Assembly (NCBI RefSeq): GCF_003918875.1
Contig: NW_025766181.1
Span: 558,001-622,000 of the forward strand
Reading direction: 5' to 3'
Source of the DNA: Haliotis rubra
Taxonomy: Eukaryota
Length of the DNA: 64,000 nt
This document shows positions 15,799 through 40,123 of the stretch, piece by piece (positions within the stretch are counted from its first letter, which is position 1; every line of letters starts with the position of its first letter). The notes below the pieces were generated by a model. It was given only the letters and a program-made list of their open reading frames with translations. It was not told the origin of the DNA and ran no database searches. Position numbers and translations under genes: made by a program.

Positions 15799-16885
15799 TA
15801 GTCAGCAGCAAAAAAAATGTCAGTACGAATTCAAAATTTGATAGGCACTGTAATCAAATCATTACGGAAATGGACACAATAAGCGGATCAAAACCATTTT
15901 TTGTGTACAATATCTTGACACATCAGTGAATAACTCAGCAGAATAACTTCAAGACATTACGTGAACGTTTGCAGTCCATTCAGACTCTTGACTTCAGTAT
16001 CTAGTGTGACCACAACGAGCGGCAATAACTGCAGCACAGCGTCTATGCATGGGGTGCACCAATCGATTGATGAAGGCCACTGGCACCTGGAAACACACTC
16101 TGTGAAAGGCCTGGCGCAGAAGATCGTCTGTGTTCGGCCTTGGTATGACATTATTCAGACTCCGCTGAATTTCATCCCAAAGATGTTCAATTGGGTTTAA
16201 ATCAGGACTAAGGGCTGGCCACTGCATAATGCTGACACCGTTCTGCTGTAGGAAGTTCCGTGTAGCTCTGGCAGTATGAGCCCGTGCGTTATCATGCTTG
16301 AAAATGTTGTTCCGGTGACGTGCGAAATGTGGTATGACTCGGGGTCTGAGAGCTTGGTCGATGTAGCGCACTGCTGTGATGCCGCCTCCTCTCCCTGGAC
16401 CAAGGTTCTGGAACACCACAGCATCCTTTCTCTGGTTCAGGCCTATTCCACCCCATACCATGATACTTGCACCTCCCCATGAGTCGCTTTCCTTAATACC
16501 TTGGTCCGAGTAACGCTGGCCACGTCGTCGCCATATTCTTGTTCTGCCATCTGCAGTTGATACGCAGTACCTACTCTCATCTGACCTGGAAGTGATTGGC
16601 AACGGCTTGTGCAGTGTGGCCAGCTTCAAGTCTTCCTAGCGCCTGGTTCCTATCAGCTATCATGAGTCGCGGCATCCTGCTGACGTTGTAATGTGAATGT
16701 TTCAACCAGGTTTGGGGGGTGCATTTTATAGGGCTGGTCCTTGTGAACAGCACGTGCAGCATGAGTTGCATGAAAAGTTTGGGAAGGAATGTCTTTGCTC
16801 AGGTAAAGTTGGAGATGTTGTCAAAATATACAATCAATACAATATACATTAAATTCCAAACTGACGTTTCTTTTGCTGCTTAGTA
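15799..16885 (-). mobile_element. Tc1-like transposon A, internally deleted copy
   Basis: TIRs TA(G/C)TCAGCAGCAAAA...GTCAGT / ACTGACGTTTCTTTTGCTGCTTAGTA; motifs SDESR, IMVWGGI, HDNARAH, WPALSPDLNPIEHLW; ~355 bp absent relative to copy at 31511-32442; empty site at ~9634. Confidence 0.9.
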
Positions 16886-17637
16886 TTTATCCCACTGAGA
16901 AACTCCACAAGGCCACATAACGGCCAGGGTAACGACACTTTATATATGAAATTTTAAGTATCATTGATGAAAATGTCTTCTACGCATGTTGAAGGATCAT
17001 TATTCGTTGATGTAAATAATATGTTAACTTTGTCCCCAACATGCTTCTATAGTATCGAGACTCTATCCAAAATAAATATCCAAGAACACTTGTCGTCATT
17101 GAAATAACAAACACAATATGTGTACAATATAACAATTGTGCCAAAACGTTAATTCAACACATGCTTATTCCAATACCAATAATACTGGTTTCAGTTCATT
17201 CCTTGTTTTAAATTACATAGTAACTTTGATAACGACGGTAAATGACCGTACTAGCATATTCAGTGGACATGGCCGCTTTGCTTTTTCTTGTTAGGATGAG
17301 CTGCGTAGACACATCCCATGATTGCGGTAAACCATCTAACAACACGCACGCATTTCCTTTGTGGATGTGTATATACATAACCGACAAATAGTGGGCAACT
17401 AACATCTTCTCTAAACGTTTAAGATAAAGTAGACCAACTATGTCAGGTGCAAACAATTGTTTAAACAAGAGGAATGAGAGTTTGCTTCTTTACTCATACA
17501 CTTCCAGAAAACCACTACAAATAGACCAGAACATACATGTATTTAAGTTGTTATTAACTAGAATAACTAACCAACTCAGCTTGCTGGCTGAGGTCAACTG
17601 GCCAGTTAGCATTCCGCACAGGAAAGCAAAAGTAACT

Positions 17638-18850
17638 CTGCATAACATAAAACTACATAAAATAAAAAGTTATTTGAAAAGTATTTAAAATAACCCTAAA
17701 TAAACATGCAGCAAGCACTTTGTTATCACTTATCGCCCGTAGCACGTGCACTTTGTGCACAATGAACTTACTTACTTTTTGTATGGTTTTTGACACCTGA
17801 AGTTCACACACCTGATATTGAAATTTGAAGAACGGTTAATTATTCTCTTGCCTCTGAATGTCATGGATAATGCGTTAATTTCAACCTAAACTGCGCTTAC
17901 GTCATGCTACGGCTTACAGAAAATCAGCATCTCTGTTCCGTGTGTATACTGGAGACTGGAATGGCCTAAAATGAAGTGGCCAGACATTTTGGTGTCCATC
18001 GAAACACGTCTCTATGGAAACGTTTTCAACATAATGGGAACACGAGAGATTTGCCTCGGACCGGCCGTCCACGCGACGCGTGACGTCACGTCAGCAAGAC
18101 AACCACATTCGGCTGACCCATATATGGAATCGAATCAAGACTGCCAGTTTGTCTGCTCCGACCATTCCTGGAATACGACCAATCAGTTCCAGAACTGTAC
18201 GGAACCGACTGAGGGAGCACAACATCGGGCCCCGACGGCTTGCAATTCAATTTTGCTCCAACGCCACAGACAGACATGTCTTGCCTGTTGCAGACATCAT
18301 CTACGTGACAGGAGACAAGATTGGGATGGTGCCTTGTTAACTGACGAGTTGCGCTTTCATCTGGATAGCTCAGATGGCAGGGCAAGGGTGTACAGACGGC
18401 GAAATGAACGGTATGCTGACTTGTGCATTGTTCCACGTTGACAGCGTTATGGAATGGGGAGTCATCACATCTCAAGGTCGGACGGAGCTTGTCATTTTTA
18501 ATGGCAATCCGACAGGTCTGCGATATCTTGATAAGATAATGCCCGTCCCCATGTCGCTACTGTGACATATTTCCTGAGACAGCAGAACATTGCGGTACAC
18601 TCCTGGCCAACTGTTTCTCCGGAGCTGTCCCCTTTAGGGTACGCTTGGGCTGAAATTGTGCGACGTTCTTGCAAGCCCAAAACCATGGACCAACATTATC
18701 CAAGCTTTCTTAAATCTCTTAGTGTCGTCTATGAGTTGTTGTTGTCAAGCCTGCATCAACGCCAATGGTGGACACACACGATACTGAATTTGCAAAGTGA
18801 CACCACATCTCTTCAAGGCCAAGTGTCAATTATCTTGTCAACAGTTAAAC
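17638..18850 (+). mobile_element. Decayed Tc1-like transposon B, copy 2
   Basis: Paralog of 10380-11797; DWDGALLTDELRFHL, WPTVSPELSP. Confidence 0.8.
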
Positions 18851-19596
18851 AGTGAAAGTGATGGAAATAACAAAACAATCATGTTAATTTTTGCATTAAA
18901 AAATTGGCATTGCATACAACATTGCACATGTATTTGACTGAATGTTGTCTAACGCCGCACTCTGGACCAAACGTTCCCATGAGAAGGGTGAGGGATAAAG
19001 GGCGGGGGGATATAGAAGTTAATATGTTATATGCCGAAGATGAAATGTTATATTCTGAAGATTTGGTAATGGTATCTGATCTATCATCAAGCAAAGGAAA
19101 TGAACTCTGCTCTCAGAATACACTTTTAAACGGAAATGGCGATCAAAATTATGAAAGTGTTTGAATGGCAATTAGAAGTGATACACATAATGTTTGTCTG
19201 TTTAACGCCGCACTCTATATGATGGTGGTGTGTAAATAATCGGGTCTGGACCAAACGATCCAGTGACGTTTATGGATACAAAAGTTGGTATGTATACATT
19301 TTCCCCTTTAGCATAATCGAATTAAATAAAATTGTCGCACATATGCACACAGTGTATTAATATGGAGGACACTGGTCTTAGACAGGGTTGTGACGTTACC
19401 CCAGAGCTTTTAGGCCGTTGGTGATAAACTGTTTACCAGCATCAATCTGACAGAATGTGGTGAGCGTAGGCGAGAAGATGTCTTTTCGTGAGGTCAAGTA
19501 TGGTACAGCGGTGTCTGAATCACATTAACAGTGCATAAATTGTGGCAGTGACGTGTTTTGCGCAGAGTTTTACGTCGTCACTTACCGATATTTTTG

Positions 19597-19680
19597 TATA
19601 AAAAAGGGATACGAGCGATACTATCTTCAGTCCACCAGTATTTGCCTTCGTATTGCGGCAGCATTTCTGCAGACTCACAT
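19597..19680 (+). promoter_or_regulatory. TATA/Inr + non-coding exon 1, copy 3
   Basis: TATAAAAA 19597, TCAGT Inr (A at 19629), GTAAGC donor 19681. Confidence 0.7.
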
Positions 19681-20279
19681 GTAAGCACATTTTCGTTGGC
19701 TTTTCATAATACATCTCCATGCTAATATCACCTGTTTTGTAGAATATCCTTAAAATTAAACCGACAAGTATTTCCATTTCAAGTGTCACAAGTGAAAATA
19801 CTTTCATGCTAGCTAGGAACACGGATCAAGGAATGTATCTGAGCATGTAACATTTCGTATGAAAGTTCGCAAGAAATATAGTAATGCTGAGAAAGTTTGC
19901 CCCTCAATTGCAGACACAATGAACATTTGAGTATTAAAAGAAGGCCACCCCAAAGTTTCTTGCATCGGTTTCCTTTATTAAGGTTTGTTATTAATGTTAA
20001 AATTCCACTTATATTTGTTTTCCTGGAACGGAGGGTGTTAAAAAGTCTCCAGTTCGTGTCAGTGTATAATCGAAGACTTAATAACCAAGAGATGACTATA
20101 TGAACTGCACATTAAAACGAATTGATCTGCCCTGATAAAAGTTCTAAGTAAAATCACATTCCATACCTTTCTTTACAACATAGACTGCGATCCTAGTTGA
20201 TGAAACACCCCACACGTATGATGGATTTACATTAACAAATGTGTTTGTTTGTAAAAATCAATCATTTTCTTCCAGCAAA

Positions 20280-21942
20280 ATGAATACTCTTCAAATTCTC
20301 GTAGTTCTTATGGCAACATGCTGTGCAAGTCAAGGAAGAAATATCCGTAAGTGTTACCAAGTTGACAAATTGCGCGAAATAATGTTAAAACAAAACCAAA
20401 TGGTATTATTCTGACATCGTACATGTAAAATACCTTGTATTTATGTAGGGTTGTTGTGTATGTGTTTAATGCCGCGAAAGAAACATCATACATTATCCCC
20501 ATGTAACTTAATATCCCCGTTTACGGGAACACCTGTGTGTCATCACTGAATTTCAGTAGTCCATTAATGTTACTTCCACAACTGTTTTGCCTTTTGCGCC
20601 TAATGGATTTTGATTTGGCTGATAATCGGCGTTGACTTATAATACATTCATAAAAGAGGTTCTATTTCCTGAGATGATTTTATTCCTGTTCTATTTGCAG
20701 GTTCCAGGCGTTTTGTAAACCAGCCACCACCAGGTACGTTTTATACATGGTCAAGATATCAAATGTATATTCTGTCATGAGAATAAGGAAAATTGCGTAT
20801 CGATAATCGAGCGAGTGTACTCGTTGGTGTGGCTTGTCTTTACAAATAATATAGGTGGGTAAAGTGTGATGTAACTTCGTGTTCAAGATTAACTCACTCA
20901 TGTTACGACGTGCAACCACGTGATTATGTGTACATGACTAGGGCATTTCTGTACTCGTCTACTCTATGCCGGTTTACGACAGCGACCCCTTGGGATACCT
21001 CATTCGGACACAGAATACTGACACAGTCCAATGGTACTTTTGTTTAGCCCTAATGCTTCTTAGCCCTAGTACTTGTCGGACAGTCTAGTCTACCTTTAGA
21101 GGCGGTCACTAGAGATGTACGTGATTACTTCGACATATTACCCTTCAGCCTGCATATAACGCCGGGAAAACTGGAAATGTAATAAATTATACAGTGACAA
21201 TACGATATTAAAAGAACATAGGCATACAGAATGCTGAGTATTGTGTCGCTGTAAAACCTTCTTTGTGGTTCTTCCAGGTTTATTCCCGCCAGGCAACAAC
21301 CATCTCGATATCCGAGCGCTTATGGCACTCTTGAAGAATCCAGTGATGATGAAAGGGTCTGGTCAGGTTAATAGTCAACAGCAACAACAACAGCAGCAGC
21401 AACAACAGCAACAACAACAACAACAGCAGCAGCAACAACAACTAGGAACGGGTCAAATTCCACAAGCCGAAGTAACTCCTCAATCAGCCCAAAATCAAGG
21501 TCAACCTCAACCTGAGCCTCTTCCTAACCAGACGAAACCTCAAAACCCGCCACTGACCCAACATACAAAGAATCAAGGACAAGTTCAGGGACAGACACCA
21601 ACACAAAATGCAGGTCAAGGTCAGCAAGGTCAAACAAACAATGGTCAGACACAACAGGCCCCCTTTCCAGCTCCAACTGCCAATACGCCAAAGACTGTCG
21701 ATCCAATGCAGCAGCGTATGGGGTACTCAAACATGTTCACCGACCCAATGTTTTTACAATACTTTCAACAATTCATGAGAAGGGTAGACAGGATGAAGCC
21801 CAAATACAGGAGAGGAGACTTTATCCCCCCAAAAGGCCTCTTCCCGGGAGGATATGTGATATCTGCTGATGGTAGTGATGCAGAAGTGAGGGACATATAT
21901 GGAAAGTTGCACTCAATTGATGGTGGCATTTTCCAAGCATAA
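20280..21942 (+). CDS. Secreted Gln-rich protein, copy 3 (254 aa; exons 20280-20346, 20701-20733, 21278-21942)
   Basis: Intact spliced frame: signal peptide, RSRR, Q22 tract, Q/P/T/N linker, C-terminal DGSDA module. Confidence 0.9.
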
Positions 21943-23342
21943 AGCTTGTGCAGACATTTTCACATTGTGATAGAATTACATGATCCGACTTTTTGTAGCC
22001 TGCTGGACAGGCATATCACAGATCATACAACTACTTTAGATTCTCACTGCAATGCATCCCATGTACATGGACGTGTTTCATGGTCTATAAACACCGCTTC
22101 ATCTTTGTCCATCACAACTTTACATCATTTTGATAGAATTTTGTTCTTTTTTGATAAATAAAATCTCTACTAAACATATTCGTGTTTATTCTTTCATTGT
22201 CAATATTGCAATATTTATTTCATGTACTTACCTTTTTCATGTCATTTTCTAATTTGCTCACCGCGTTGGCCAACGCCTTTGGGGAAGTATGAGGATATTA
22301 TTGTATAGTTATGATGCAGCGTTCAGTCTCTATACTCTGATAGAAAACTGCATTCATCAGAAGGACCCAAGTCCAATGAATAACACCCACAACAAACACC
22401 CATTTGAGGATTCCACAATATCATGTGCATAAGAAGTGGACGACGTTTATTCTTGAATAAAGGCAACATGGTACATAGTTTCAACAGCTAATATATAGTG
22501 GCGTTACATACACCAGAAGCTGACACATAATTCCTAACGAAATGTTTGGGATTAAGTTTTCTCTCAAAATGGACCAAGTAAAGCGAAATTATATTGGTTG
22601 CCGTTTCAGAAAGATTACTTTTAGTGTACATTCGATATGTTATGATCTATTTAGGAGAATATCAAAACCAAAATGTTTTTGGTAAAATCGACAATAGTTC
22701 CTGGTCTGTTGTATGTAGCCTACAGTTTAATAAATATTGACTTTCTACTTTCAAATTTAGTATGTTTACTGAGGTACTATCGGAAGTAAGGTAACTTTTC
22801 ATTCAGATGTGTTTGAATTTTGTTAACGGAATATACATGACTTTTTTTTAACGGTGATAGTTAAATTTGAAATGATTTCATAAAGATGTGTTAATATAGA
22901 AAGGTCAAATTAAAATACACCAATATGCTACTGTACATTTCAATAAATACATAAATAAATAAATAAATGAATAAATAAATCTAGTACATGATGGCATATA
23001 CTATACTCAGCAGCAAAAAAAAAGTCAGTACGAATTCAAAATTTGATAGGCACTGTAATCAAATCATTACAGAAATGGACACAATAAGCGGATCAAAACC
23101 ATTTTTTATGTACAATATCTTGACACATCAGTGAACAACTCAGCAGTATTTCAAGACATTACGTGAACGTTTGCAGTCCATTCAGACTCTTGACTTCAGT
23201 ATCTAGTGTGACCATCACGAGCGGCAATAACTGCAGCACAGCGTCTATGCATGGGGTGCACCAATCGATTGATGAAGGCCATTGGCACCTGGAACCACAC
23301 TCTGTGAAAGGCCTGACGCAATAAATCGTCTGTGTTCGGCCT

Positions 23343-23790
23343 GGCCTCAGACCACAGTTACCCCCTTAACTTTTACCATGACCCGGAAGTAAAATATGAG
23401 AATATAGTGCCTTGTTTAAATGGGCTGTTCTGCTTGTGCTGATTTTTCAGGGTGACTTGTGATAGCTTAAATGAAAGGTAAGACATTGTACTTTATTGCA
23501 AAATTTTTGGGTCCACAATCTACTCATGGTATTGACACCAGCCTTCCTTGATTTGACCCCAAGTTCAAGGCTGTCTGGTGTGTTTCGGCTCGTAACTTCC
23601 GGTGACCATTGTTTACAGTGGATACAGCAAAATCGACATGGTCGATCCAGGCTCATATTTTGCCGATTAAGTGACAAGTGGCAGGTTGGTGAGCATGCAA
23701 CAGGAGAACAGCCTACGACCGATATTAATTATGGTGCACTGGCATGTCACTGTAGATAGCAAAGAAGGAAAATAATTGTGGTCTGAGGCC
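23343..23790 (+). repeat. Left long terminal direct repeat (448 bp)
   Basis: GGCCTCAGACCACAGTTA ... TAATTGTGGTCTGAGGCC (18-bp TIR, 1 mismatch). Confidence 0.95.
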
Positions 23791-24061
23791 TGATATGGTG
23801 AAGGTAGTGCAAGTGTTTAATTTGCTATATGTCTGTTATTTTTCAAAATATTCACTTGAAACTTTGCATATTTACTGCCAGGAGCATTTGAAATATGTAT
23901 ACATGTGTTTTCAACTGAAAATATTTTTTTTACATTTTTATGAATTTATTTCAGTTTTCTGATTGCATATTGTTTTAGTGAGTGAGCGGACGCATCATAT
24001 TTAGACATATTGGTTCAATTATGGTGAATGTATGTATCACTACACCGCACGTGCCTTATAG

Positions 24062-24463
24062 ATGCATGTGATACCTAAAATGGCTAATATTCAAGCCTTT
24101 TTCCAAAGATATAGAGCCAAGTTTGTGAAGAATTCAGTCCTCAGTGTGGAAAATGGCATATGTCATATGTGGACTGGAGCATGCAAGCACAGTGGGTATG
24201 GGGTGTTGCGGTATTTTTGCCCCATAGCCTACCAGTGGCGTACTACTCATGCTCACAGGCTGAGTTTTATAGTACACAGGGAAAACTTCGACATAGGTGA
24301 TTACGACATCAGCCATTTGTGCCACAACAGTAAATGCACCTATGTCGAACACCTGTCTGCTGAACCATACAGCATAAATGCAGACAGAGTGGCCTGTGTA
24401 AACAGGGGTGTGTGTAAAGGCCATGCACCTTTCCCAGATTGCCTTTTGGCATTGAAGTCATAG
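24062..24463 (+). CDS. His-Me finger (His-Cys box-like) endonuclease, intact copy
   Basis: CHMWTG...GYG...AHRLSF...DISHLCHNSKC..VEHL..EP..IN..R..C....C.GH...P.C. Confidence 0.9.
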   Translation: MHVIPKMANIQAFFQRYRAKFVKNSVLSVENGICHMWTGACKHSGYGVLRYFCPIAYQWRTTHAHRLSFIVHRENFDIGDYDISHLCHNSKCTYVEHLSAEPYSINADRVACVNRGVCKGHAPFPDCLLALKS

Positions 24464-24693
24464 GAGAACAGAAAAACAAAGGCAAAGTATATGAAAAATA
24501 CTATATCAAATAATATAGTAAAATTTTATTCATATTTCCTGATTTTCACCACAGTCACAGTTAGTTGTGACATAGCATTTATTCACAACACATAGCTTTA
24601 GAGACATTATGATGTATTTAAACTTAAAGTTACACAGTATCTGTCTTTAGGAAGTAATTAGCACATACAGTTCTGCAGCATCACTGCACATTT

Positions 24694-26694
24694 TCAATAT
24701 TTTGAATAAGAATGTTCATGGTTTTTTGCTGAAACACGGTACAGGGTCTAACTGACCCTTTCTGTAGTCCCCACTCTGCTTGTCAGTCTGTTTAGACTTC
24801 AAATGTTCACAGATCTTGCTTCCATGCTGTGTAAGTTTCCTTTTCACAACACTGGGGCTTTTCTGATAGTCTTTGTGATAGGTAGCCTCCTTGTCCATTT
24901 GTTCAAGTGACCGCACAGCTCGGCTTGAAAGTTTCACCCCAGAATGGTCGCACTTGTCGATTGCTGATGTCCCAGGGCCATTGTTGAGCCTGTGAATTGT
25001 GGAAGAAGCCCTCCCAATCATGTTCCTTGAAAAGTTTACATTCTTTGGCAAAGAAATACTCAGTGATCGATTGGCAGCTTCACATTTCTGTGTGTCTGTG
25101 TACAGTTTCATTTGTTCCACCACTTCTACACTTAACTTCATTTTGAGAATTTCATTAAGCAAGTGTTTATCATTGTCATCCATATTGAAATGAGTGATAC
25201 TGTTGCAGCCGAGGAACATGGATCGCTGCCACCAGCTGTTTGTTACACCTCCTCTACACACAACTGAGTACCGGGCACACCTGGAGCAGTCGCCGCTGTA
25301 GCACTTGAGGGTTGCTTCGAGCACTCTTGGTAAGATACTACGAAGTGTTTTCATGTCACCTGCATGATCTTTCATGAGTTCTTTTAGTATCAGGCTGCAC
25401 CGTGCTTTGACATCCTGGCTCAGCACCTTCTTTGCTTCCATTTTATGTGTACGAGTAGTGCCGGGGAACATATCTGGGTTAAAATCAGCTCTGTAACATT
25501 GTCGGAACTGTCCTTGAGCCAAGTGGGTTGGGTCAGCTAGCCTTTGCACCTTCCACATTGGGTCCAACACTTTGAGAGCTTTGTCTACTCCATCTGCAGA
25601 CTTCGAATCCCCATCGGTTGTGGCATACTTTATGAGTACACCCTGTAGTGCGAGCTGATTACCAATGTCCTCTCCCATTTTGAACTCAGAGAATGGAGTG
25701 AAGGCCGACATGTTCGCAGTACAGTCTGGGTGCCCCCCCTGGACATTTCACATCCATGCCTTTTCCTTTCAGCCAGGCACCAGTCCAGCAGAGCTTATTC
25801 TGGAATGACGCACTGACGATGAACTTCTTGTCAGTAACAGTTTCGCAGGCGATGCCGATTGCTTGTGATGCATTCTGCCCTGGCTTCTTCCTGCTTGCTA
25901 TTGTTGTCGAGTTGTATCGGCCATCCATAGCAATGTTCATCTCACACGGCTCAGTACCCCTCTTTCGATTAACTTCCTTCACTAACTCCACCTTTTCTGC
26001 CATATCCTTAGTGTTAAGTTCAGTTACAGCCTTAGCCACCTTGTTGGAGGTCCTCTGCATACTGCTCCTGCATGGGGGGTGGAATGTCCATGTTGGCCAT
26101 CAGTAACCTCGCTCTCGTATTTCCTATAGGTGTGTCCTGTAGACCCAAGGCAAGTCCCACGTTGGGTGCTGCTGGGTTTGGCCCAGGTTTACCCGTCTCG
26201 ATTTCTTTGTATAACTTCATTTCAGGTGCTACAAAGTCACATGTGACACATTTCAGTGTTATTTTCCAGCATGCTCCCCATTTTCTCTCCTTGGCTATCT
26301 GCAGCTGAGGGTCGTCACAGTCACTGGATGTTGACCGATGCAGTCGCAGAGCTGTGTTCCATGCTTCGGCCACCTTTTCATTGTCGACTAGTCGCATACC
26401 CTCCAAGTCATCTTTGCTTGACTCTTGTTTCAGGTCATGCTTGCTCGTTGAAGTGGGACGCAGCAGCCTCACTGAAGTAGAGATGCCATCGCAGTCAGGT
26501 GTTGACAGCCCAGTGCCATCCAGCCTTGACTTGGTGACCAGGGAGAAGTCTTCTGCACTCAACCTAGTGACTGTCCTGGGTATCTGGGGTGGAGAGGCAC
26601 TTTCCGACTCTTCCGATTCAAGGGTGAGACCTTTGTTCCAGGGAGTATGGCCTTTGCTGAACTGTGACTTGATTCTCTTGCGGTCGCCTTTCAT
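24694..26694 (-). CDS. Kolobok-type DDD/E transposase, copy 1 (~665 aa after repairing 3 homopolymer frameshifts)
   Basis: CxxC (KCVTC), IAMDGRYNS, TTDGDS, TQKCEAANRS; frameshifts at ~26074, ~25735, ~24722; probable start MKG at 26694 downstream of TATATAAG. Confidence 0.8.
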
Positions 26695-26941
26695 CGTGAT
26701 TGTGTCGAATAGAACTAATGAGCTCTGAGCACAGCATGTACTTATATATCCCATCTCTGTGTGTTGTCACTGGCACTGACAAGCAGGTATATGTATTAGA
26801 AAATGTATTGGAAACTCAAGACATACACATGTCTTGCGCCACTGGTGTAAATCGCAGTTGAGCCATACACACCTACTGACACTTTGTCGCGTATTGGCCA
26901 GGTGTCAGGTGAGAGTGGACATGCTTGGTGACTCGCTGCAC

Positions 26942-26979
26942 TTGATTGGCTGTACTCAGCTACTTGTGCAGCCAATCAA
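26942..26979. promoter_or_regulatory. Inverted pair of CCAAT boxes upstream of transposase
   Basis: TTGATTGGCTGTAC-N10-GTGCAGCCAATCAA; repeated at ~30579-30616. Confidence 0.5.
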
Positions 26980-27696
26980 TTTAACGAGGAAAGATAGGGC
27001 TTTCTAATGAATACAAATTTAACAGTTTCAATTTTCATTTTTGTTGAAAAATATGAACTTTAATGGAATTATTTTAGTATAAAATGCATGTATGTATATA
27101 AAAATAGAGAAAAAAATGAAAAAAAATGCTTTAATGGACTGAAATCATTGTCCTTTGATAGCACATGCAATAACAAAAGAGGAACACTTGATGTTTTTGT
27201 CAATTTCCACCTGGTTATGGAGTTATAGACAAATTAGAATTGTGTTTGAAATTAATTCATGCCCAAAATTAACACTCAAATGCCAGAGATACAGCATGGA
27301 GTAAAAGCAGTATAAGTCAAGTTGTGTATGAGTTAGGGCTTTCAAATTTTCTGTGAGCCTTACATAGTGTCTGGGCTTAGTATTGATTAAGTTTTATTTA
27401 ATTTGCAGACTTTTTTGGTGTCCTGATATGGTGAAGGTAGTGCAAGTGTTTAATTTGCTATATGTCTGTTATTTTTCAAAATATTCACTTGAAACTTTGC
27501 ATATTTACTGCCAGGAGCATTTGAAATATGTATACATGTGTTTTCAACTGAAAATATTTTTTTTTACATTTTTTATGAATTTATTTCAGTTTTCTGATTG
27601 CATATTGTTTTAGTGAGTGAGCGGACGCATCATATTTAGACATATTGGTTCAATTATGGTGAATGTATGTATCACTACACCGCACGTGCCTTATAG

Positions 27697-28100
27697 ATGC
27701 ATGTGATACCTAAAATGGCTAATATTCAAGCCTTTTTCCAAAGATATAGAGCCAAGTTTGTGAAGAATTCAGTCCTCAGTGTGGAAAATGGCATATGTCA
27801 TATGTGGACTGGAGCATGCAAGCACAGTGGGTATGGGGTGTGTTGCGGTATTTTTGCCCCATAGCCTACCAGTGGCGTACTACTCATGCTCACAGGCTGA
27901 GTTTTATAGTACACAGGGAAAACTTCGACATAGGTGATTACGACATCAGCCATTTGTGCCACAACAGTAAATGCACCTATGTCGAACACCTGTCTGCTGA
28001 ACCACACAGCATAAATGCAGACAGAGTGGCCTGTGTAAACAGGGGTGTGTGTAAAGGCCATGCACCTTTCCCAGATTGCCTTTTGGCATTGAAGTCATAG
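27697..28100 (+). pseudogene. His-Me finger endonuclease, copy 2 (2-bp TG insertion at ~27839)
   Basis: Near-identical to 24062-24463; GGGGTGTGTTG vs GGGGTGTTG. Confidence 0.85.
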
Positions 28101-28330
28101 GAGAACAGAAAAACAAAGGCAAAGTATATGAAAAATACTATATCAAATAATATAGTAAAATTTTATTCATATTTCCTGATTTTCACCACAGTCACAGTTA
28201 GTTGTGACATAGCATTTATTCACAACACATAGCTTTAGAGACATTATGATGTATTTAAACTTAAAGTTACACAGTATCTGTCTTTAGGAAGTAATTAGCA
28301 CATACAGTTCTGCAGCATCACTGCACATTT

Positions 28331-30330
28331 TCAATATTTTGAATAAGAATGTTCATGGTTTTTGCTGAAACACGGTACAGGGTCTAACTGACCCTTTCTG
28401 TAGTCCCCACTCTGCTTGTCAGTCTGTTTAGACTTCAAATGTTCACAGATCTTGCTTCCATGCTGTGTAAGTTTCCTTTTCACAACACTGGGGCTTTTCT
28501 GATAGTCTTTGTGATAGGTAGCCTCCTTGTCCATTTGTTCAAGTGACCGCACAGCTCGGCTTGAAAGTTTCACCCCAGAATGGTCGCACTTGTCGATTGC
28601 TGATGTCCCAGGGCCATTGTTGAGCCTGTGAATTGTGGAAGAAGCCCTCCCAATCATGTTCCTTGAAAAGTTTACATTCTTTGGCAAAGAAATACTCAGT
28701 GATCGATTGGCAGCTTCACATTTCTGTGTGTCTGTGTACAGTTTCATTTGTTCCACCACTTCTACACTTAACTTCATTTTGAGAATTTCATTAAGCAAGT
28801 GTTTATCATTGTCATCCATATTGAAATGAGTGATACTGTTGCAGCCGAGGAACATGGATCGCTGCCACCAGCTGTTTGTTACACCTCCTCTACACACAAC
28901 TGAGTACCGGGCACACCTGGAGCAGTCGCCGCTGTAGCACTTGAGGGTTGCTTCGAGCACTCTTGGTAAGATACTACGAAGTGTTTTCATGTCACCTGCA
29001 TGATCTTTCATGAGTTCTTTTAGTATCAGGCTGCACCGTGCTTTGACATCCTGGCTCAGCACCTTCTTTGCTTCCATTTTATGTGTACGAGTAGTGCCGG
29101 GGAACATATCTGGGTTAAAATCAGCTCTGTAACATTGTCGGAACTGTCCTTGAGCCAAGTGGGTTGGGTCAGCTAGCCTTTGCACCTTCCACATTGGGTC
29201 CAACACTTTGAGAGCTTTGTCTACTCCATCTGCAGACTTCGAATCCCCATCGGTTGTGGCATACTTTATGAGTACACCCTGTAGTGCGAGCTGATTACCA
29301 ATGTCCTCTCCCATTTTGAACTCAGAGAATGGAGTGAAGGCCGACATGTTCGCAGTACAGTCTGGGTGCCCCCCCTGGACATTTCACATCCATGCCTTTT
29401 CCTTTCAGCCAGGCACCAGTCCAGCAGAGCTTATTCTGGAATGACGCACTGACGATGAACTTCTTGTCAGTAACAGTTTCGCAGGCGATGCCGATTGCTT
29501 GTGATGCATTCTGCCCTGGCTTCTTCCTGCTTGCTATTGTTGTCGAGTTGTATCGGCCATCCATAGCAATGTTCATCTCACACGGCTCAGTACCCCTCTT
29601 TCGATTAACTTCCTTCACTAACTCCACCTTTTCTGCCATATCCTTAGTGTTAAGTTCAGTTACAGCCTTAGCCACCTTGTTGGAGGTCCTCTGCATACTG
29701 CTCCTGCATGGGGGTGGAATGTCCATGTTGGCCATCAGTAACCTCGCTCTCGTATTTCCTATAGGTGTGTCCTGTAGACCCAAGGCAAGTCCCACGTTGG
29801 GTGCTGCTGGGTTTGGCCCAGGTTTACCCGTCTCGATTTCTTTGTATAACTTCATTTCAGGTGCTACAAAGTCACATGTGACACATTTCAGTGTTATTTT
29901 CCAGCATGCTCCCCATTTTCTCTCCTTGGCTATCTGCAGCTGAGGGTCGTCACAGTCACTGGATGTTGACCAATGCAGTCGCAGAGCTGTGTTCCATGCT
30001 TCGGCCACCTTTTCATTGTCGACTAGTCGCATACCCTCCAAGTCATCTTTGCTTGACTCTTGTTTCAGGTCATGCTTGCTCGTTGAAGTGGGACGCAGCA
30101 GCCTCACTGAAGTAGAGATGCCATCGCAGTCAGGTGTTGACAGCCCAGTGCCATCCAGCCTTGACTTGGTGACCAGGGGAGAAGTCTTCTGCACTCAACC
30201 TAGTGACTGTCCTGGGTATCTGGGGTGGAGCGGCACTTTCCGACTCTTCCGATTCAAGGGTGAGACCTTTGTTCCAGGGAGTATGGCCTTTGCTGAACTG
30301 TGACTTGATTCTCTTGCGGTCGCCTTTCAT
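28331..30330 (-). CDS. Kolobok-type DDD/E transposase, copy 2 (2 frameshifts, ~30177 and ~29371)
   Basis: Near-identical to copy 1; ORFs 30130, 29322 and 28331 join into one protein. Confidence 0.8.
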
Positions 30331-31060
30331 CGTGATTGTGTCGAATAGAACTAATGAGCTCTGAGCACAGCATGTACTTATATATCCCATCTCTGTGTGT
30401 TGTCACTGGCACTGACAAGCAGGTATATGTATTAGAAAATGTATTGGAAACTCAAGACATACACATGTCTTGCGCCACTGGTGTAAATCGCAGTTGAGCC
30501 ATACACACCTACTGACACTTTGTCGCGTATTGGCCAGGTGTCAGGTGAGAGTGGACATGCTTGGTGACTTCGCTGCACTTGATTGGCTGTACTCAGCTAC
30601 TTGTGCAGCCAATCAATTTAACGAGGAAAGATAGGGCTTTCTAATGAATACAAATTTAACAGTTTCAATTTTCATTTTTGTTGAAAAATATGAACTTTAA
30701 TGGAATTATTTTAGTATAAAATGCATGTATGTATATAAAAATAGAGAAAAAATGAAAAAAATGCTTTAATGGACTGAAACCATTGTCCTTTGATAGCACA
30801 TGCAATAACAAAGAGGAACACTTGATGTTTTTGTCAATTTCCACCTGGTTATGGAGTTATAGACAAATTAGAATTGTGTTTGAAATTAATTCATGCCCAA
30901 AATTAACACTCAAATGCCAGAGATACAGCATGGAGTAAAAGCAGTATAAGTCAAGTTGTGTATGAGTTAGGGCTTTCAAATTTTCTGTGAGCCTTACATT
31001 GTGTCTGGGCTTAGTATTGATTAAGTTATATTTAATTTGCAGACTTTTGGTGTCCTGATA

Positions 31061-31510
31061 GGCCTCAGACCACAGTTACCCCCTTAACTTTTACCATGAC
31101 CGGAAGTAAAATATGAGAATATAGTGCCTTGTTTAAATGGGCTGTTCTGCTTGTGCTGATTTTTTCAGGGTGACTTGTGATAGCTTAAATGAAAGGTAAG
31201 ACATTGTACTTTATTGCAAAATTTTTTTGGGTCCACAATCTACTCATGGTATTGACACCAGCCTTCCTTGATTTGACCCCAAGTTCAAGGCTGTCTGGTG
31301 TGTTTCGGCTCGTAACTTCCGGTGACCATTGTTTACAGTGGATACAGCAAAATCGACATGGTCGATCCAGGCTCATATTTTGCCGATTAAGTGACAAGTG
31401 GCAGGTTGGTGAGCATGCAACAGGAGAACAGCCTACGACCGATATTAATTATGGTGCACTGGCATGTCACTGTAGATAGCAAAGAAGGAAAATAATTGTG
31501 GTCTGAGGCC
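31061..31510 (+). repeat. Right long terminal direct repeat (450 bp)
   Basis: Same sequence and TIRs as left LTDR apart from homopolymer lengths. Confidence 0.95.
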
Positions 31511-33176
31511 TTATCATGCTTGAAAATGTTGTTCCGGTGACGTGCGAAATGTGGTATGACGTAGGGTCTGAGAGCTTGGTCGATGTAACGCACTGCTGTG
31601 ATGCCACCTCCTCTCCCTGGACCAAGGGTTCTGGAACACCACAGAACCCACTCTCTGGTTCAGGCCTATTCCACCCCATACCATGATACTTGCACCTTCC
31701 CATGAGCCTCTTTGGTCCGAGTAACGCTGGCCACGTCGACGCCATATTATTGTTCTGCCATCTGCAGTTGATACGCAGTACCGACTCTCATCTGTGAACA
31801 GAACAGTTCTCTATTGCCTGTATCGCCAGTTTTGGTGTTGTAAGGCAAACTGTAGACGTTCACACCGATGACGAGGAGTGAGGATAGGTCCACGGTAAGG
31901 TCTACGGCATTGGAGGTCCCCGCTGTTAAGACGTCGGCGTACTGTATCAGTACTGATTGGTCTTCCGTGTGTTCCCACTGTTTGGCGTGCTGTTTCGGAT
32001 GCCTGCATGAAGGGATTCTGTACATGCTGTCGCACAGCATGGCAGTCTTGTCGTCTTGTGGTCACCCTTGGTCCGCCAGTACGGGGGCGATCATTTGTCG
32101 TGCTGGTGGCCCGGAAACGTTGCTGCAGCCTGTAGATGGTCCGAACGTTGACCTTGAAGTGATTGGCAACGGCTTGTGCAGTGTGGCCAGCTTCAAGTCT
32201 TCCTAGCGCCTGGTTCCTCTCGGCTATCATGAGTCGCGGCATCCTGCTGACGTTGTTTCAACCAGGTTTGTGGGGGCGCATTTTAAAGGGCTGGTCCTTG
32301 TGAACAGCCCGCGCAGCATGAGTTGCATGAAACGTTTTGGAAGGAATGTCTTTGCTCAAGTAAAGTTGGAGATGTTGTCAAAATATACAATCAATACAAT
32401 ATACATTAAATTCCAAACTGACGTTTCTTTTGCTGCTTAGTATTTATCCCACTGAGAAACTCCACAAGGCCAAATCACGGCCAGGGTAACGACACTTCAT
32501 ATATGAAATTTTAAGTATCATTGATGAAAGTTTCTTCTACGCATATTGAAGGATCATCATTCGTTGATGTAAAGAATATGTTAACTTTGTCTCCAGCATG
32601 CTTCTATAGTATCGAGACTCTATCCAAAATAAATATCCAAGAACACTTGTCGTCATTGAAATAACAAACACAATATGTGTACAATATAACAATTGTGCCA
32701 AAACGTTAATTCAACACATGCTTATTCCAATACCAATAATACTGGTTTCAGTTCATTCCTTGTTTTAAGTTACATACTAACTTTGATAACGACGGTAAAT
32801 GACCGTACTAGCATATTCAGCGGACATGGCCGCTTCGCTTTTTCTTGTTACGAAGTGCTGCGTAGACACATTCCTTGATTGCTGTAGACAATCTAACAAC
32901 ACGCACGTATTTCCTTTGTGGATGTGTAAATACATAACCGAGAAATAGTGAGCAACTGACATCTTATCTAAACGTTTAAGATAAAGTAGGCCAGCTATGT
33001 CAGGTGCAAACAATTGTTTAAACAAGAGGAATGAGAGTTTGCTTCTTTACTCATACACTTCCAGAAAACCACTACAAATAGACCAGAACATACATGTATT
33101 TAAGTTGTTATTAACTACAATAACTAAACATTTCAGCTTTGCTGGCTGAGGCCAACTGGCCAGTTAGCATTCCGCA

Positions 33177-34380
33177 CAGGAAAGCAAAAGTAACTGTGCA
33201 TAACATAAAACTACATAAAATAAAAATTATTTGAAAAGTAATTTAAATAACCCTAAATAAACATGCAGCAAGCACTTTGTTATCACGTATCGCCCGTAGC
33301 ACGTGCACTTTGTGCACAATGAACTTACTTACTTTTTGTATGGTTTTTGACACCTGAAGTTCACACACCTGATATTGAAATTTGAAGAGCGGTTAATTAT
33401 TCTCTTGCCTCTGAATGTTATGGGTACCGCGTTAATTTCAACCTTGCTACGGTTTACAGAAAATCAGCGTCTCTGTTCCTTGGGTTTACTGGAGACTCGA
33501 ATGGCCTAAAATGAAGTGGCCAGACATTTTGGTGTCCATCGAAACACGTCTTTATGGAAACGTTTTCAACATAATGGGGAACACGAGAGATTTGCCTCAG
33601 ACCGGCCATCCACGCGACGCGTGACGTCACGTCAGCAAGACAACAACATTCGGCTGACCCATATATGGAATCGAGTCCAGACTGCCAGATTGTCTGCTCG
33701 GAACATACCTGGAATACGACCAATCAGTTCCAGAACTGTACGGAACCGACTGAGGGAGCACAACATCGGGCCCCGACGGCTTGCAATTCAATTTTGCTCC
33801 AACGCCACAGACAGACACGTCGTGCCTGGTGCAGACATCATCTATTTTACAGGAGACCAGATTGGGATGGTGTTTTGTTCACTGACGAGTTGCGCTTTCA
33901 TCTGGATAGCTCAGATGGCAGGGCAAGGGTGTACAGACGGCGAGATGAACGGTATGCTGACTTGTGCATTATTCAACGTTGACAGCGTTATGGAATGGGG
34001 AGTCATCACATCTCAAGGTCGGACGAAACTTGTCATGTTCAATAGCAATCCGACAGGTCTGCGATATCTTCATAAGATATCCCCGTCCCCATGTCGCTAC
34101 GTTCACAGATTTCCTGAGACAGCAGAACATTGCGGTACACTCCTGGCCAAATGTTTCTCCGGAGCTGTCCCCTTTTGGGTACGCTTGGGCTGAAATGGTG
34201 CGTCAAGCCCAATATCATGGAACAACATTCTCCAAGCTTTCTTAAATCGCTTAGTGTCGTTGTCAAACCTGCATCAACGCCAATGGTGGAGAAACACGAT
34301 TACTGAATTTGCGAAGTGACACCACATCTCTTCAAGGCCAAGTGTCAATTCCTAATTATCTTGTCAACAGTTAAACAGTG
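33177..34380 (+). mobile_element. Decayed Tc1-like transposon B, copy 3
   Basis: VARHFGVHRNT, DWDGVLFTDELRFHL, WPNVSPELSP. Confidence 0.8.
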
Positions 34381-35102
34381 AAAGTGATGGAAAGCACAAA
34401 ACAATCATGTTAGTTTTTGCATTAAAAAATTGGCATTGTAAACAACATTGCACAGGTATTTTACTGAATGTTGTCTAACGCCGCACTCTGGACCAAACGT
34501 TCCCGTGAGAAGGGTGGGGGGTTAAAGGGCGGGGGGATACAGAAGTTAATATGTTATATTCTGAAGATTTGGTAATGGTATCTGATCTATCATCAAACAA
34601 AGGAAATAAACTCTGCTCTCAGAATACACTTTTAAACGGAAATGGCCATCAAAATTATGAAAGCGTTTGAATGGAAATTAGAAGTGATACACATAATGTT
34701 TGTCTGTCTAACGCCGCACTTTATATGAAGGCGGTGTGTAAATAATCGGATCTGGACCAAACGATCCAGTGACATTTATGGATACAAAAGTTGGTATGTA
34801 AACATTTTCCCCTTTAGCATAATCGAATTAAATAAAATTGTCGCACATATGCACACAGTGTATTAATATGGAGAACACTGGTCTTAGACAGGGTTGTGAC
34901 GTTACTCCAGAGCTTTTAGGCCGCTGGTGATAAATTGTTTACCAGCATCAATCTGACAGAATGTGGTGAGCGTAGGCGAGAAGATGTCTTTTCGTGAGGT
35001 CAAGTATGGTACAGCGGTGTCTGAATCACATTAACAGTGCATAAATTGTGGCAGTGACGTGTTTTGCGCAGAGTTTTACGTCGTCACTTACCGATATGTT
35101 GG

Positions 35103-35185
35103 TATAAAAGGGGATACGAGCGATCCTATCTTCAGTCCACCAGTATTTGCCTTCGTATTGCGGCAGCATTTCTGCAGACTCACAT
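35103..35185 (+). promoter_or_regulatory. TATA/Inr + non-coding exon 1, copy 4
   Basis: TATAAAAG 35103, TCAGT Inr (A at 35134), GTAAGT donor 35186. Confidence 0.7.
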
Positions 35186-35756
35186 GTAAGTACATTTTCG
35201 TTGGCTTTTCATAATACATATCCATGCTAATATCACATGTTTTGTAGAATATCCTTAAAATTAAACCGACAATTATTTCCATTTCAAGTGTCACAAGTGA
35301 AAATACGTTCATGCTAGCTAGGAACACGGATCAAGGAATGTATCTGAGCATGTAACATTTCGTATGAATGTTCGCAAGAAATATAGTAATACTGAGAAAG
35401 TTTGTCCCTCAGTTGCAGACACAATGAACATTTGAGTATTAACAGAAAGCCACCCCAAAGTTTCTTGCATCTGTTTCTTTTATTAAGGTTTGTTATTAAT
35501 GTTAAAATTCCACTTATATTTGTTTTACTGGAACGGAGGGTGTTAAAAAGTCTCCAGTTCGTGTCAGTGTGTAATCGAAGACTTAATAACCAAGAGTACA
35601 CCATATCAACTCGTAAAAGTTCTACGTAAAATCACATTCCATACCTTTCTTTACAACATAGACTGCGATCCTAGTTGATGAAACACCCCACACGTATGAT
35701 GGATTTACATAACAAATTTGTTTGTTTGTAAAAATCAATCATTTTCTTCCAGCAAA

Positions 35757-37390
35757 ATGAATACTCTTCAAATTCTCGTAGTTCTTTTGGCAACATGCTG
35801 TGCAAGTCAAGGAAGAAATATCCGTAAGTGTTACCAAGTTGTGTCTGTTATCTGTTGCGTGAATTAATGTTAAAACAAAACCTAATGGTATTCTGACATC
35901 GTAGATGCAAAATACCTTGTATTTATGTAGGGTTGTTGTGTATGTGTTTAATGCCGCGAAAGAAACATCATACATTATCCCCATGTAACATAATATCCCC
36001 GTTTACGGGAACACCTGTGTGTCATCACTGAATTTCAGTAGTCCATTAATGTTACTTCCACAACTGTTTTGCCTTTTGCGCCTAATGGATTCTGATTTGG
36101 CTGATAATCGGCGTTGACTTATAATACATTCATAAAAGAGGTTCTATTTCCTGAGATGTATTCATTCCTGTTCTATTTGCAGGTTCCAGGCGTTTTGTAA
36201 ACCAGCCACCACCAGGTACGTTTTGTACATGGTCAAGACATAAAATGTATATTCTGTCATGAGAGTGTACTCGTTGGTGTGGCTTGTCTTTACAAATAAT
36301 ATAGGTGGGTAAAGTGTGATGTAATTTCGTGTTCAAGATTAACTCACTCATGTTACGACGTGCAACCACGTGATTATGTGTAAATGACTAGGGCATTTCA
36401 GTACTCGTCTACTCTATGCCGGTTTACGACAGCGAGCCCTTGGGATGCCTCATTCGGACACAGAATACTGACACAGTCGAACGGTACTTTTTTAGCCCTA
36501 GTACTTGTTAGCCCTAGTACTTGTCGGGCAGTCTAGTCTACCTTCAGAGGCGGTCACTAGAGATGTACATGATTACTTCGACATATTACCCTTCAGCCTG
36601 CATCTAACGTCGGGAAAACCGTTAATGTAGTAAAGTATACAGTGACAATACGATATTAAAAGAACATCAGCATACAGAATGCTGAGTATTGTGTCGCTGT
36701 AAAACCTTCTTTGTGGTTCTTTCAGATTTATTCCCGCCAGGCAACAACCATCTCGATATCCGAGCGCTTATGGCACTCTTGAAGAATCCAGTGATGATGA
36801 AAGGGTCTGGTCAGGTTAATAGTCAACAGCAACAACAACAGCAGCAGCAACAACAGCAACAACAACAACAACAGCAGCAGCAGCAACAACTAGGAACGGG
36901 TCAAATTCCACAAGCCGAAGTAACTCCTCAATCAGCCCAAAATCAAGGTCAACCTCAACCTGAGCCTCTTCCAACCCAGACGAAACCTCAAAACCCGCCA
37001 CTGACCCAACATACAAAGAATCAAGGACAAGTTCAGGGACAGACACCAACACAAAATGCAGGTCAAGGTCAGCAAGGTCAAACAAACAATGGTCAGACAC
37101 AACAGGTCCCCGTCCCAGCTCCAACTGTTAATACTCCAAAGACTGTCGATCCAATGCAGCAGTTTATGGGGTACTCAAACATGTTCACTGACCCAATGTT
37201 TTTACAATACTTTCAACAATTCATGAGAAGGGTAGACATGATGAAGCCCAAATACAGGAGAGGAGACTTTGTCCCCCCAAAAGGCCTCTTCCCGGGAGGA
37301 TATGTGATATCTGCTGATGGTAGTGATGCAGAAGTAAGGGACATATATGGAAAGTTGCACTCAATTGATGGTGGCGTTTTCCAAGCATAA
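35757..37390 (+). CDS. Secreted Gln-rich protein, copy 4 (254 aa; exons 35757-35823, 36183-36215, 36726-37390)
   Basis: Intact spliced frame, same architecture as copies 1-3. Confidence 0.9.
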
Positions 37391-39972: not shown

Positions 39973-40123
39973 NNNNNNNNNNNNNNNNNNNNNNNNNNNN
40001 NNNNNNNNNNNNNNNNNNNNNNNNNNNNNNNNNNNNNNNNNNNNNNNNNNNNNNNNNNNNNNNNNNNNNNNNNNNNNNNNNNNNNNNNNNNNNNNNNNNN
40101 NNNNNNNNNNNNNNNNNNNNNNN
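39973..40123. other. Assembly gap (N run)
   Basis: Ns. Confidence 1.

What the first reader, a model, noticed from the sequence alone, without database searches (positions are those of the whole stretch)
23343..31510. Composite eukaryotic DNA transposon pairing a homing-type nuclease with a DDD/E transposase between MITE-like direct repeats
Seen: two near-identical ~450-bp direct repeats, each with an 18-bp TIR, enclose a His-Me finger nuclease gene and a convergent transposase gene. Known: this is the KolobokP architecture (Kolobok superfamily, LTDRs of ~450 or ~660 bp, nuclease related to group I intron homing endonucleases), so the system class is described. Inferred: this family is very young, since the LTDRs differ only in homopolymer lengths and nuclease copy 1 is intact.
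Basis: partly seen in the sequence, partly recalled or inferred. Interest (0 to 1): 0.8.

Follow-up and report, generated by a model that had tools for sequence, protein, structure and literature searches.

The report
Known abalone KolobokP transposon, tandem dimer
This is a copy of an already published abalone DNA transposon family (KolobokP-1_HaRub) in one of its described variant forms, two internal units in tandem between two 450-bp direct repeats, so it is ordinary apart from a missing target-site duplication.

Summary
Two direct repeats (LTDRs, 23343-23790 and 31061-31510; 448 and 450 bp) have no substitutions between them and three homopolymer indels. Each carries an 18-bp terminal inverted repeat (17 of 18 bases).

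They enclose two tandem 3.6-kb internal units (INT1 23791-27428, INT2 27424-31060) with no LTDR between them. This LTDR-(INT)2-LTDR form is described by Kojima & Bao 2022 (PMC9587614). The INT begins and ends with TGATA, and the INT/INT junction keeps one copy.

Each INT encodes an I-PpoI-like His-Cys box nuclease and a convergent DDE transposase. The LTDR, INT ends and transposase text match KolobokP-1_HaRub (Haliotis rubra; 4539 bp, LTDR 452, TIR 18).

- There is no target-site duplication, and 148 bp of the target, a Tc1/mariner remnant, are missing.
- Both transposase copies share a frame break in a G7 run inside the CCHC finger. The published HaRub protein starts right after the same point.
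- Nuclease copy 1 is open but has Tyr where copy 2 and four relatives have His.
- Indels outnumber substitutions (12 to 6), so ORF status may reflect assembly noise.

Verdict: already known, low interest.

The parts
23343..23790 (-). LTDR1, 448 bp. It is the 3' LTDR in the element's own orientation, because the element lies reversed in the window. TIRs at 23343-23360 and 23773-23790.
   Evidence: matches the KolobokP-1_HaRub-LTDR text in reverse complement
23791..27428 (-). INT1 internal unit. It begins with TGATA (23791-23795); its last TGATA (27424-27428) is shared with INT2.
24062..24463 (+). His-Cys box / His-Me finger nuclease, copy 1, open ORF of 133 aa. Residues S84 H85 C87 H88 C92 H97 E101 N106, plus C34 and C112/C118/H121/C127. 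Y103 stands where copy 2 and the relatives have His.
24716..26754 (-). DDE transposase, copy 1, read in three frames. Breaks: a G6 run at 26074-26079 (private), a G7 run at 25733-25739 (C7 on the + strand; shared with copy 2, inside the CCHC finger), and a T6 run at 24722-24727 near the C-terminus (private). Motifs: D1 AMDGRYN 25931-25911, D2 TTDGDS 25621-25604, DPTH 25534-25523, Cys finger 25303-25250, E in KCEAAN 25087-25070.
27424..27428 (.). INT1/INT2 junction. A single TGATA stands where a canonical multimer would have TGATA-LTDR-TGATA.
   Evidence: the same kind of junction is described in PMC9587614
27424..31060 (-). INT2 internal unit, ending in TGATA (31056-31060).
27697..28100 (+). 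Nuclease copy 2. The frame is broken at a GT-repeat length difference around 27838-27843. It keeps His at the position that is Y103 in copy 1.
28331..30390 (-). DDE transposase, copy 2. Breaks: a G4 run at 30176-30179 (private) and the shared G7 run (C7 on the + strand, 29369-29375). Its C-terminus ...CFSKNHEHSYSKY is the same as in the published HaRub protein.
31061..31510 (-). LTDR2, 450 bp. TIRs at 31061-31078 and 31493-31510.
23338..23342 (.). Left flank, ending ...GGCCT. It is not repeated on the right side, so there is no TSD.
31511..31515 (.). Right flank, TTATC...; it differs from the left flank.
16141..16288 (.). The 148 bp present at the paralogous uninterrupted site (previous tandem unit) and missing at the insertion. 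It lies inside an open Tc1/mariner DDE_3 ORF (15994-16629, minus strand).

Best explanation
The region is one insertion of the published KolobokP family KolobokP-1_HaRub (Kolobok superfamily; abalone, Haliotis). It lies in reverse orientation and has the described variant form LTDR-(INT)2-LTDR.

How the element type is thought to work:
- The DDE transposase recognises the 18-bp TIRs carried by each about 450-bp LTDR.
- Using the outermost TIRs moves the whole composite. Using the two TIRs of one LTDR excises that LTDR alone.
- The I-PpoI-like His-Cys box nuclease is proposed, but not shown, to cut within or at the ends of LTDRs and so provoke unequal crossover that builds multimers.

Inferred history at this locus:
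1. A monomer or multimer inserted into a Tc1/mariner remnant in the spacer of a 7.2-kb host tandem array, after the duplication that produced units 2 and 3.
2. Unequal crossover between LTDRs made a dimer.
3. The middle LTDR was then lost together with one copy of its flanking 5-bp TGATA, leaving INT-TGATA-INT.
4. A separate event removed the TSD and 148 bp of adjacent target. The most likely cause is a transposase-end-mediated adjacent deletion, or repair after an aborted excision.

As assembled, neither transposase copy is translatable, so any further mobility would need a transposase supplied in trans.

Shown: the anatomy, the domains, the family match, the absent TSD and the target deletion. 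Inferred: the order of events, the role of the nuclease, and whether the frame breaks are real.
For: Anatomy. Nuclease: PF05551 at 36.9 bits against a cut-off of 27; I-PpoI chains at E = 0.005 with S-H, C, H, C, H, E and N aligned; the same residues and the C-terminal C-C-H-C are invariant against a 41%-identical relative. Transposase: PF20700 covered at profile positions 1-208 and 228-355 of 357, split at the shared break; D, CCHC, D, DxxH, Cys finger and E motifs located. Family identity: the LTDR text, the INT start 'tatcaggacac...', the transposase text and the figures 4539 / 452 / TSD 4-5 / TIR 18 / 136 LTDR / 45 INT copies for KolobokP-1_HaRub. Our monomer would be 448 + 3637 + 450 = 4535 bp. 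The LTDR-(INT)n-LTDR form with a micro-deletion at the INT/INT junction is described. Empty-site comparison.
Against: No TSD flanks this copy, whereas the family is reported with 4-5 bp TSDs. The insertion history therefore cannot be read directly. The supplement text is machine-read PDF with visible errors, so percent identity to the consensus could not be computed. No other genomic copy could be fetched here, so copy numbers rest on the paper. The indel-to-substitution ratio between repeat copies (12 to 6) is abnormal. It suggests unpolished long-read homopolymer errors, so calling an ORF 'broken' or 'intact' is uncertain.
Confidence: 0.93

Rival explanations
1. History variant. Two separate same-orientation KolobokP insertions sat 148 bp apart after a local hop. 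The transposase then excised 'LTDR - host DNA - LTDR' as one composite unit, using the outer TIRs of the two facing LTDRs. This joined the two INTs at one TGATA and left different target halves on the two sides.
For: One event would explain three facts together: no TSD, exactly the inter-site DNA missing, and a clean INT/INT junction. Solo-LTDR excision with this type of footprint is documented for the lineage.
Against: It needs two insertions within 148 bp in the same orientation. Nothing at this locus separates it from a single insertion followed by an adjacent deletion. INT1 and INT2 differ by only 0.17% and the LTDRs have no substitutions, which fits a local duplication equally well.
Confidence: 0.12
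2. The tandem INT-INT is an assembly artefact: a monomer falsely duplicated, or two haplotypes placed in tandem.
For: The region is a long near-identical repeat with many homopolymer differences of the kind typical of poorly polished long-read assembly.
Against: The copies differ by 6 substitutions. The junction is base-precise, with a single TGATA, and reproduces the junction type reported for real LTDR-(INT)n-LTDR insertions in other species. No N run or contig break lies nearby.
Confidence: 0.05
3. The element belongs to another class: an LTR retrotransposon, a MULE/MuDR element (as the Pfam name suggests), or an unrelated gene pair caught by chance between two MITEs.
For: It has long direct terminal repeats. 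The Pfam family hit by the transposase is named 'Mutator-like transposase'.
Against: No RT, integrase or gag lies inside the element. The LTDRs carry their own TIRs. The transposase has the CCHC finger after the first D, plus the DxxH motif and the Cys finger before the E, which the paper uses to define the late Kolobok lineages. Its text is near-identical to a protein placed in the KolobokP tree. The same LTDR + INT combination is a multi-copy family.
Confidence: 0.02
4. The copy is an autonomous, functional element, and all frame breaks are homopolymer sequencing errors.
For: Every indel between the repeat copies lies in a homopolymer or GT repeat. Indels outnumber substitutions 12 to 6. All catalytic and zinc-binding motifs are present in the pieces.
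Against: The G7 break is identical in both copies, and the published HaRub protein also starts just after it. That independence is not guaranteed if the window comes from the same assembly. A 1294-aa ORF elsewhere in the window is uninterrupted, so the assembly is not error-ridden everywhere.
Confidence: 0.25

Closest known systems
KolobokP-1_HaRub (Haliotis rubra; Kojima & Bao 2022, PMC9587614, Table S1 and Data S1/S3)
   Same: LTDR sequence and length (452 against 448/450). The 18-bp TIR GGCCTCAGACCACAATTA. An INT starting TATCAGGACAC... in the element's orientation. A monomer length of 4539 against 4535 bp. Transposase text from NVQGGHPDCTANMSAFTPF... to ...CFSKNHEHSYSKY. The same frame break before GGHPDC.
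   Different: This copy is a dimer without a middle LTDR. It lacks the 4-5 bp TSD and has lost 148 bp of target. It also carries private homopolymer differences.
KolobokP-1_HaRuf (Haliotis rufescens)
   Same: Sister family with the same size and TIR. By eye, on machine-read text, most residues of the transposase match. Its transposase reads through ...VKCPGGHPDCTANM....
   Different: It has many substitutions in the LTDR and in the protein (for example KVTLKCVVCDFTAPE against KITLKCVTCDFVAPE), and no frame break at the CCHC finger.
I-PpoI and other His-Cys box homing endonucleases of group I introns (PDB 1A73, 1CZ0)
   Same: The His-Me finger core SHLCHN-x2-C-x4-H-x3-E-x4-N aligns residue for residue. 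Two Cys/His zinc motifs are present.
   Different: The gene is not inside an intron. The protein has 133 aa against 163. The target site is unknown. No palindrome beyond chance was found in the LTDR.
Bacterial composite and pseudo-compound transposons (Tn10, Tn5, IS26 type)
   Same: Two directly repeated terminal modules, each with its own inverted ends, flank a central segment. A single module can excise on its own. Adjacent deletions without a TSD are classic outcomes of such systems (established knowledge; analogy drawn).
   Different: Here the transposase is encoded in the central segment, not in the terminal modules. The host is eukaryotic. The element has an extra homing-type nuclease.

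Membership tests
KolobokP lineage | Long terminal direct repeats of about 450 or about 660 bp | tested here: met
   448 and 450 bp, with no substitutions between them
KolobokP lineage | Each LTDR carries short TIRs (11-18 bp) with termini 5'-RR...YY-3' | tested here: met
   18 bp, 17 of 18 complementary, GG...CC. Four occurrences against 0.02 expected by chance
KolobokP lineage | [quoted passage not shown] | tested here: met
   PF20700 on the minus strand and PF05551 on the plus strand, 3' ends facing, in both INT copies
KolobokP lineage | Insertion flanked by a 3-5 bp TSD | tested here: not met
   The flanks are ...GGCCT and TTATC.... The paralogous site shows 148 bp missing. This is a property of this copy; inside it, each LTDR position is flanked by the 5-bp TGATA
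KolobokP lineage | Sequence match to a named family member | tested here: met
   The LTDR, INT and transposase text of KolobokP-1_HaRub were found by word look-up in the paper's supplement. Percent identity could not be computed because of machine-reading errors
KolobokP lineage | The same LTDR + INT recur elsewhere in the genome, including solo LTDRs and multimers | not testable with these tools
   No abalone genome is available here. Exact-protein look-ups found nothing. The paper reports 136 LTDR and 45 INT copies
Kolobok superfamily (late lineages with a CCHC finger) | DDE triad with a CCHC finger after the first D, a C/DxxH motif, and a Cys finger before the E | tested here: met
   AMDGRYN; KLC...VKC | GGH-PDC (split by the frame break); TTDGDS; DPTH; CYSGDCSRCARYSVVC; KCEAAN.
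Kolobok superfamily | Phylogenetic placement among Kolobok rather than MuDR, P or hAT | not tested
   No reference set was available. The placement relies on the published tree that contains the near-identical HaRub/HaRuf proteins
His-Cys box homing endonucleases (I-PpoI group) | His-Me finger with S97/H98, H110, E114 and N119 equivalents, plus eight Cys/His zinc ligands | tested here: met
   S84 H85, H97, E101, N106; C34, C87, C92, H97 and C112, C118, H121, C127. The correspondence of the C-terminal site rests on spacing only
His-Cys box homing endonucleases (I-PpoI group) | The I-PpoI fold | tested here: inconclusive
   The single-sequence AlphaFold model had a mean pLDDT of 30 and was unusable
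LTR retrotransposon | RT, integrase and gag between the direct repeats; LTRs ending TG...CA | tested here: not met
   No such domains lie inside the element; the ends are GG...CC with 18-bp TIRs

The most novel reading that the evidence does not exclude
The missing TSD, the clean loss of exactly the 148 bp between two potential target sites, and the precise INT/INT junction could be the footprint of one event. In that event the transposase excised 'LTDR - host DNA - LTDR' from two neighbouring insertions. That would mean pairs of KolobokP LTDRs can mobilise intervening host DNA like a bacterial composite transposon. A second oddity is unexplained: the same G7-run frame break in both transposase copies and in the published family protein. 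It could mark amplification of a transposase-dead master element or, much less likely, recoding at the run.
Probability: 0.1. Interest if true: 0.45.

Novelty: already known. Interest (0 to 1): 0.15.

Why it matters
It adds little beyond confirmation. The element class, this family, and the dimer-without-middle-LTDR form were all published in 2022. The locus is a clean worked example, because a paralogous uninterrupted target lies 7 kb away. That comparison shows a KolobokP copy without a TSD and with an adjacent 148-bp target deletion. The published survey excluded such cases, since it counted only TSD-flanked insertions. A 2026 review (PMC13565253) still calls the role of the nuclease unconfirmed. 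An open nuclease ORF with its cognate LTDRs is therefore usable material for a cleavage assay.

Tried and rejected
- Exact-sequence look-ups of the nuclease and of the 338-aa transposase piece in public assemblies found nothing.
- The word-based protein search with the nuclease returned one relative at 41% identity (P0001, from an ENA metagenome contig). Its locus L001 shows no LTDR pair and no Mutator-like ORF, only RT fragments, so it gave no second example of the architecture. I did not take L001 or the window for human sequence.
- The single-sequence AlphaFold model of the nuclease had a pLDDT of 30, so no fold search was run.
- A palindrome scan of the LTDR for a candidate nuclease site found one 6+3+6 site (23632-23646). 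It is no better than chance: 40% of shuffles do as well.
- The RNA fold downstream of the G7 run gave z = -1.5, so there is no sign of a frameshift-stimulating structure.
- The Rfam scan of the window gave no hit, so no group I intron remnant sits next to the nuclease.
- Several peptide words were not found in the supplement because of alignment gaps and machine-reading errors.
- I did not run the large representative-protein search or further word searches. The family scans and the paper had already settled both proteins, and the operators flagged the cost.
- The N runs at 39973-40123 and 44438-44578 were left alone.
Full report
**Observation.** Two direct repeats lie at 23343-23790 (448 bp) and 31061-31510 (450 bp). 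They align with no substitutions and three homopolymer-length differences. Each begins GGCCTCAGACCACAGTTA and ends with the reverse complement of GGCCTCAGACCACAATTA, an 18-bp TIR matching at 17 of 18 bases. These are the only four matches in the 64-kb window, where 0.02 are expected by chance.

There is not one gene pair but two tandem internal units: INT1 at 23791-27428 and INT2 at 27424-31060, about 3635 bp each, with no LTDR between them. The INT starts with TGATA and ends with TGATA, so every LTDR position is flanked by this 5-mer. The INT1/INT2 junction holds a single TGATA at 27424-27428. INT1 and INT2 differ by 6 substitutions (0.17%) and about 9 indels, all in homopolymers or a GT repeat.

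**Genes.** The plus strand of each INT carries a 133-aa ORF. Copy 1 (24062-24463) is open. Copy 2 (27697-28100) loses its frame at a GT-repeat difference near 27838.
- The ORF passes Pfam zf-His_Me_endon (PF05551, 36.9 bits against a cut-off of 27).
- It aligns to I-PpoI (E = 0.005) with S-H-L-C-H-N, C, H, E and N in register.
- These residues and a C-terminal C-x5-C-x2-H-x5-C motif are invariant against the one relative found, P0001 at 41% identity.
- Copy 1 has Tyr103. Copy 2, P0001 and the three KolobokP nucleases visible in the paper's alignment all have His there. An open frame is therefore not proof of a wild-type nuclease.

The minus strand carries a convergent gene of about 680 codons (26754 to 24716 in INT1, 30390 to 28331 in INT2). 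Its pieces cover Pfam PF20700 'Mutator-like transposase' at positions 1-208 and 228-355 of 357. The pieces contain the first D (AMDGRYN), a CCHC finger, the second D (TTDGDS), DPTH, a four-Cys finger and the E (KCEAAN). This is the signature the paper gives for the late Kolobok lineages.

Both copies change frame inside a run of seven G, between the second C and the H of the CCHC finger (C7 on the + strand at 25733-25739 and 29369-29375). Copy 1 has two further private breaks, at the G run 26074-26079 and the T run 24722-24727. Copy 2 has one, at the G run 30176-30179.

**Identity.** Kojima & Bao 2022 (PMC9587614) defined KolobokP as LTDR-INT-LTDR. The LTDRs are about 450 or about 660 bp long, carry their own TIRs of up to 18 bp, and have 5'-RR/YY-3' termini. 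[quoted passage not shown] Solo LTDRs, (LTDR-INT)n-LTDR multimers and LTDR-(INT)n-LTDR forms are frequent. [quoted passage not shown]

Word look-ups in the paper's supplement matched the family as follows:
- Our LTDR, in reverse complement, matches KolobokP-1_HaRub-LTDR of Haliotis rubra.
- Our INT end matches the start of KolobokP-1_HaRub-I.
- Our transposase matches KolobokP-1_HaRub_1p and, with more differences, KolobokP-1_HaRuf_1p.

Table S1 gives this family 4539 bp, LTDR 452, TSD 4/5, TIR 18, and 136 LTDR and 45 INT copies. A monomer built from our parts would be 4535 bp. The window is therefore most likely from Haliotis rubra or a very close relative. The element is a member of an already named family in an already described variant form.

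The supplement is a machine-read PDF with visible letter errors, so I give no percent identity.

**A detail linking the locus to the literature.** The published HaRub protein starts at NVQ-GGHPDCTANMSAFTPF... This is exactly the reading frame that opens after the stop codon next to the G7 run in our copies. The sister HaRuf protein reads straight through ...VKCPGGHPDCTANM.... The break is therefore present in the authors' family-level sequence too. Two explanations remain:
- The H. rubra family amplified from a master whose transposase was already broken, so it was mobilised in trans.
- The run is a systematic homopolymer error, in which case the two observations may not be independent.

Between our repeat copies, indels outnumber substitutions 12 to 6. 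That ratio is abnormal for real mutation and typical of long-read errors in repeats that short reads cannot polish. A 1294-aa ORF elsewhere in the window is uninterrupted, however. I leave this point open.

**Insertion site.** The window holds four tandem units of about 7.2 kb. The spacer after units 2 and 3 contains a Tc1/mariner remnant: ORF 15994-16629 on the minus strand, PF13358 at 54.7 bits. The left flank of the KolobokP copy aligns to 15139-16140 at 94%, right up to the junction. The right flank aligns from 16289 onward. The unit-2 paralogue thus serves as an empty site, and 148 bp (16141-16288, inside the open Tc1 ORF) are missing at the insertion. The flanks ...GGCCT and TTATC... share no duplication.

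The insertion is younger than the unit 2/3 duplication (6% divergence). It has no TSD, unlike the insertions counted in the paper, which excluded TSD-less copies by design.

**Mechanism.** Shown: the anatomy, the domains, the family match and the target deletion. Inferred:
1. The transposase acts on the TIRs of the LTDRs.
2. The dimer arose by unequal crossover between LTDRs. This is the paper's model, possibly provoked by nuclease cleavage, and is still unconfirmed according to a 2026 review.
3. The middle LTDR was lost together with one TGATA, matching the published excision footprints.
4. The TSD and the 148 bp were removed by an end-anchored adjacent deletion.

An alternative reading explains the deletion, the absent TSD and the junction in one step. 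Two insertions sat 148 bp apart, and the transposase then excised LTDR-host DNA-LTDR as a composite. I give this about 10%, because nothing here discriminates between the two readings.

**Tests that gave nothing.** No palindrome beyond chance lies in the LTDR. No structure lies after the G7 run. No Rfam family, including group I introns, hits the window. The single-sequence structure model was unusable.

**Verdict.** The age inference is trimmed to 'this copy is recent'. Novelty: already known. Interest is low.

Noticed in passing
window 3400-8400, 10100-14800, 17400-22000, 32900-37400: Four tandem units of about 7.2 kb, 65-100% identical in pieces. Each ends in a Gln-rich ORF with a poly-Q run and no Pfam hit (for example 21241-21942, +, 233 aa). 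This is probably a tandemly duplicated host gene family. The KolobokP dimer accounts for the wider spacing between units 3 and 4.
   Followed up: partly
window 15994-16629 (-) and the interrupted copy at about 22800-23342 / 31511-32100: A Tc1/mariner transposase remnant (PF13358 DDE_3, 54.7 bits) lies in the spacers after units 2 and 3. The unit-3 copy is the KolobokP target. Other Tc1-like pieces lie at 42529-43299 and about 17971-18855.
   Followed up: partly
window 49831-53715 (-): An uninterrupted 1294-aa ORF with no Pfam hit. It is strongly repetitive: RDQ(T/A)S-type short repeats, about 55-aa 'GS.AQDFQQ.GQN..GMMD' repeats, and 390-bp and 108-bp DNA tandem repeats. It looks like a low-complexity structural or secreted protein gene in a single exon.
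   Followed up: no
window 61691-62226 and 41645-41825: A 44-bp tandem repeat in 12 copies (85% matches) and a 98-bp repeat in 1.8 copies.
   Followed up: no
window 56474-57694 (-): An ORF with a reverse-transcriptase fragment (RVT_1, 28.9 bits, just under the cut-off). It is a retroelement remnant.
   Followed up: no
window 25733-25739 and 29369-29375: An identical G7-run frame break occurs in both transposase copies. The published KolobokP-1_HaRub protein begins just after the same point, whereas the sister family in H. rufescens reads through. This is either a family-wide real mutation or a systematic homopolymer error.
   Followed up: partly
window 24368 / 28005: The open nuclease copy has Tyr103. 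The frame-broken copy and all relatives seen have His at that position, in the motif E-x-H-x-x-N.
   Followed up: partly
L001 10001-10558: A solitary His-Cys box nuclease gene (P0001, 185 aa, 41% identical) lies on a 288-kb eukaryote-like contig of an ENA metagenome assembly. It sits beside RT and integrase fragments and a NACHT gene, without LTDRs or a Kolobok-type transposase.
   Followed up: partly
window 39973-40123 and 44438-44578: Two N runs (151 and 141 bases); left as they are.
   Followed up: no
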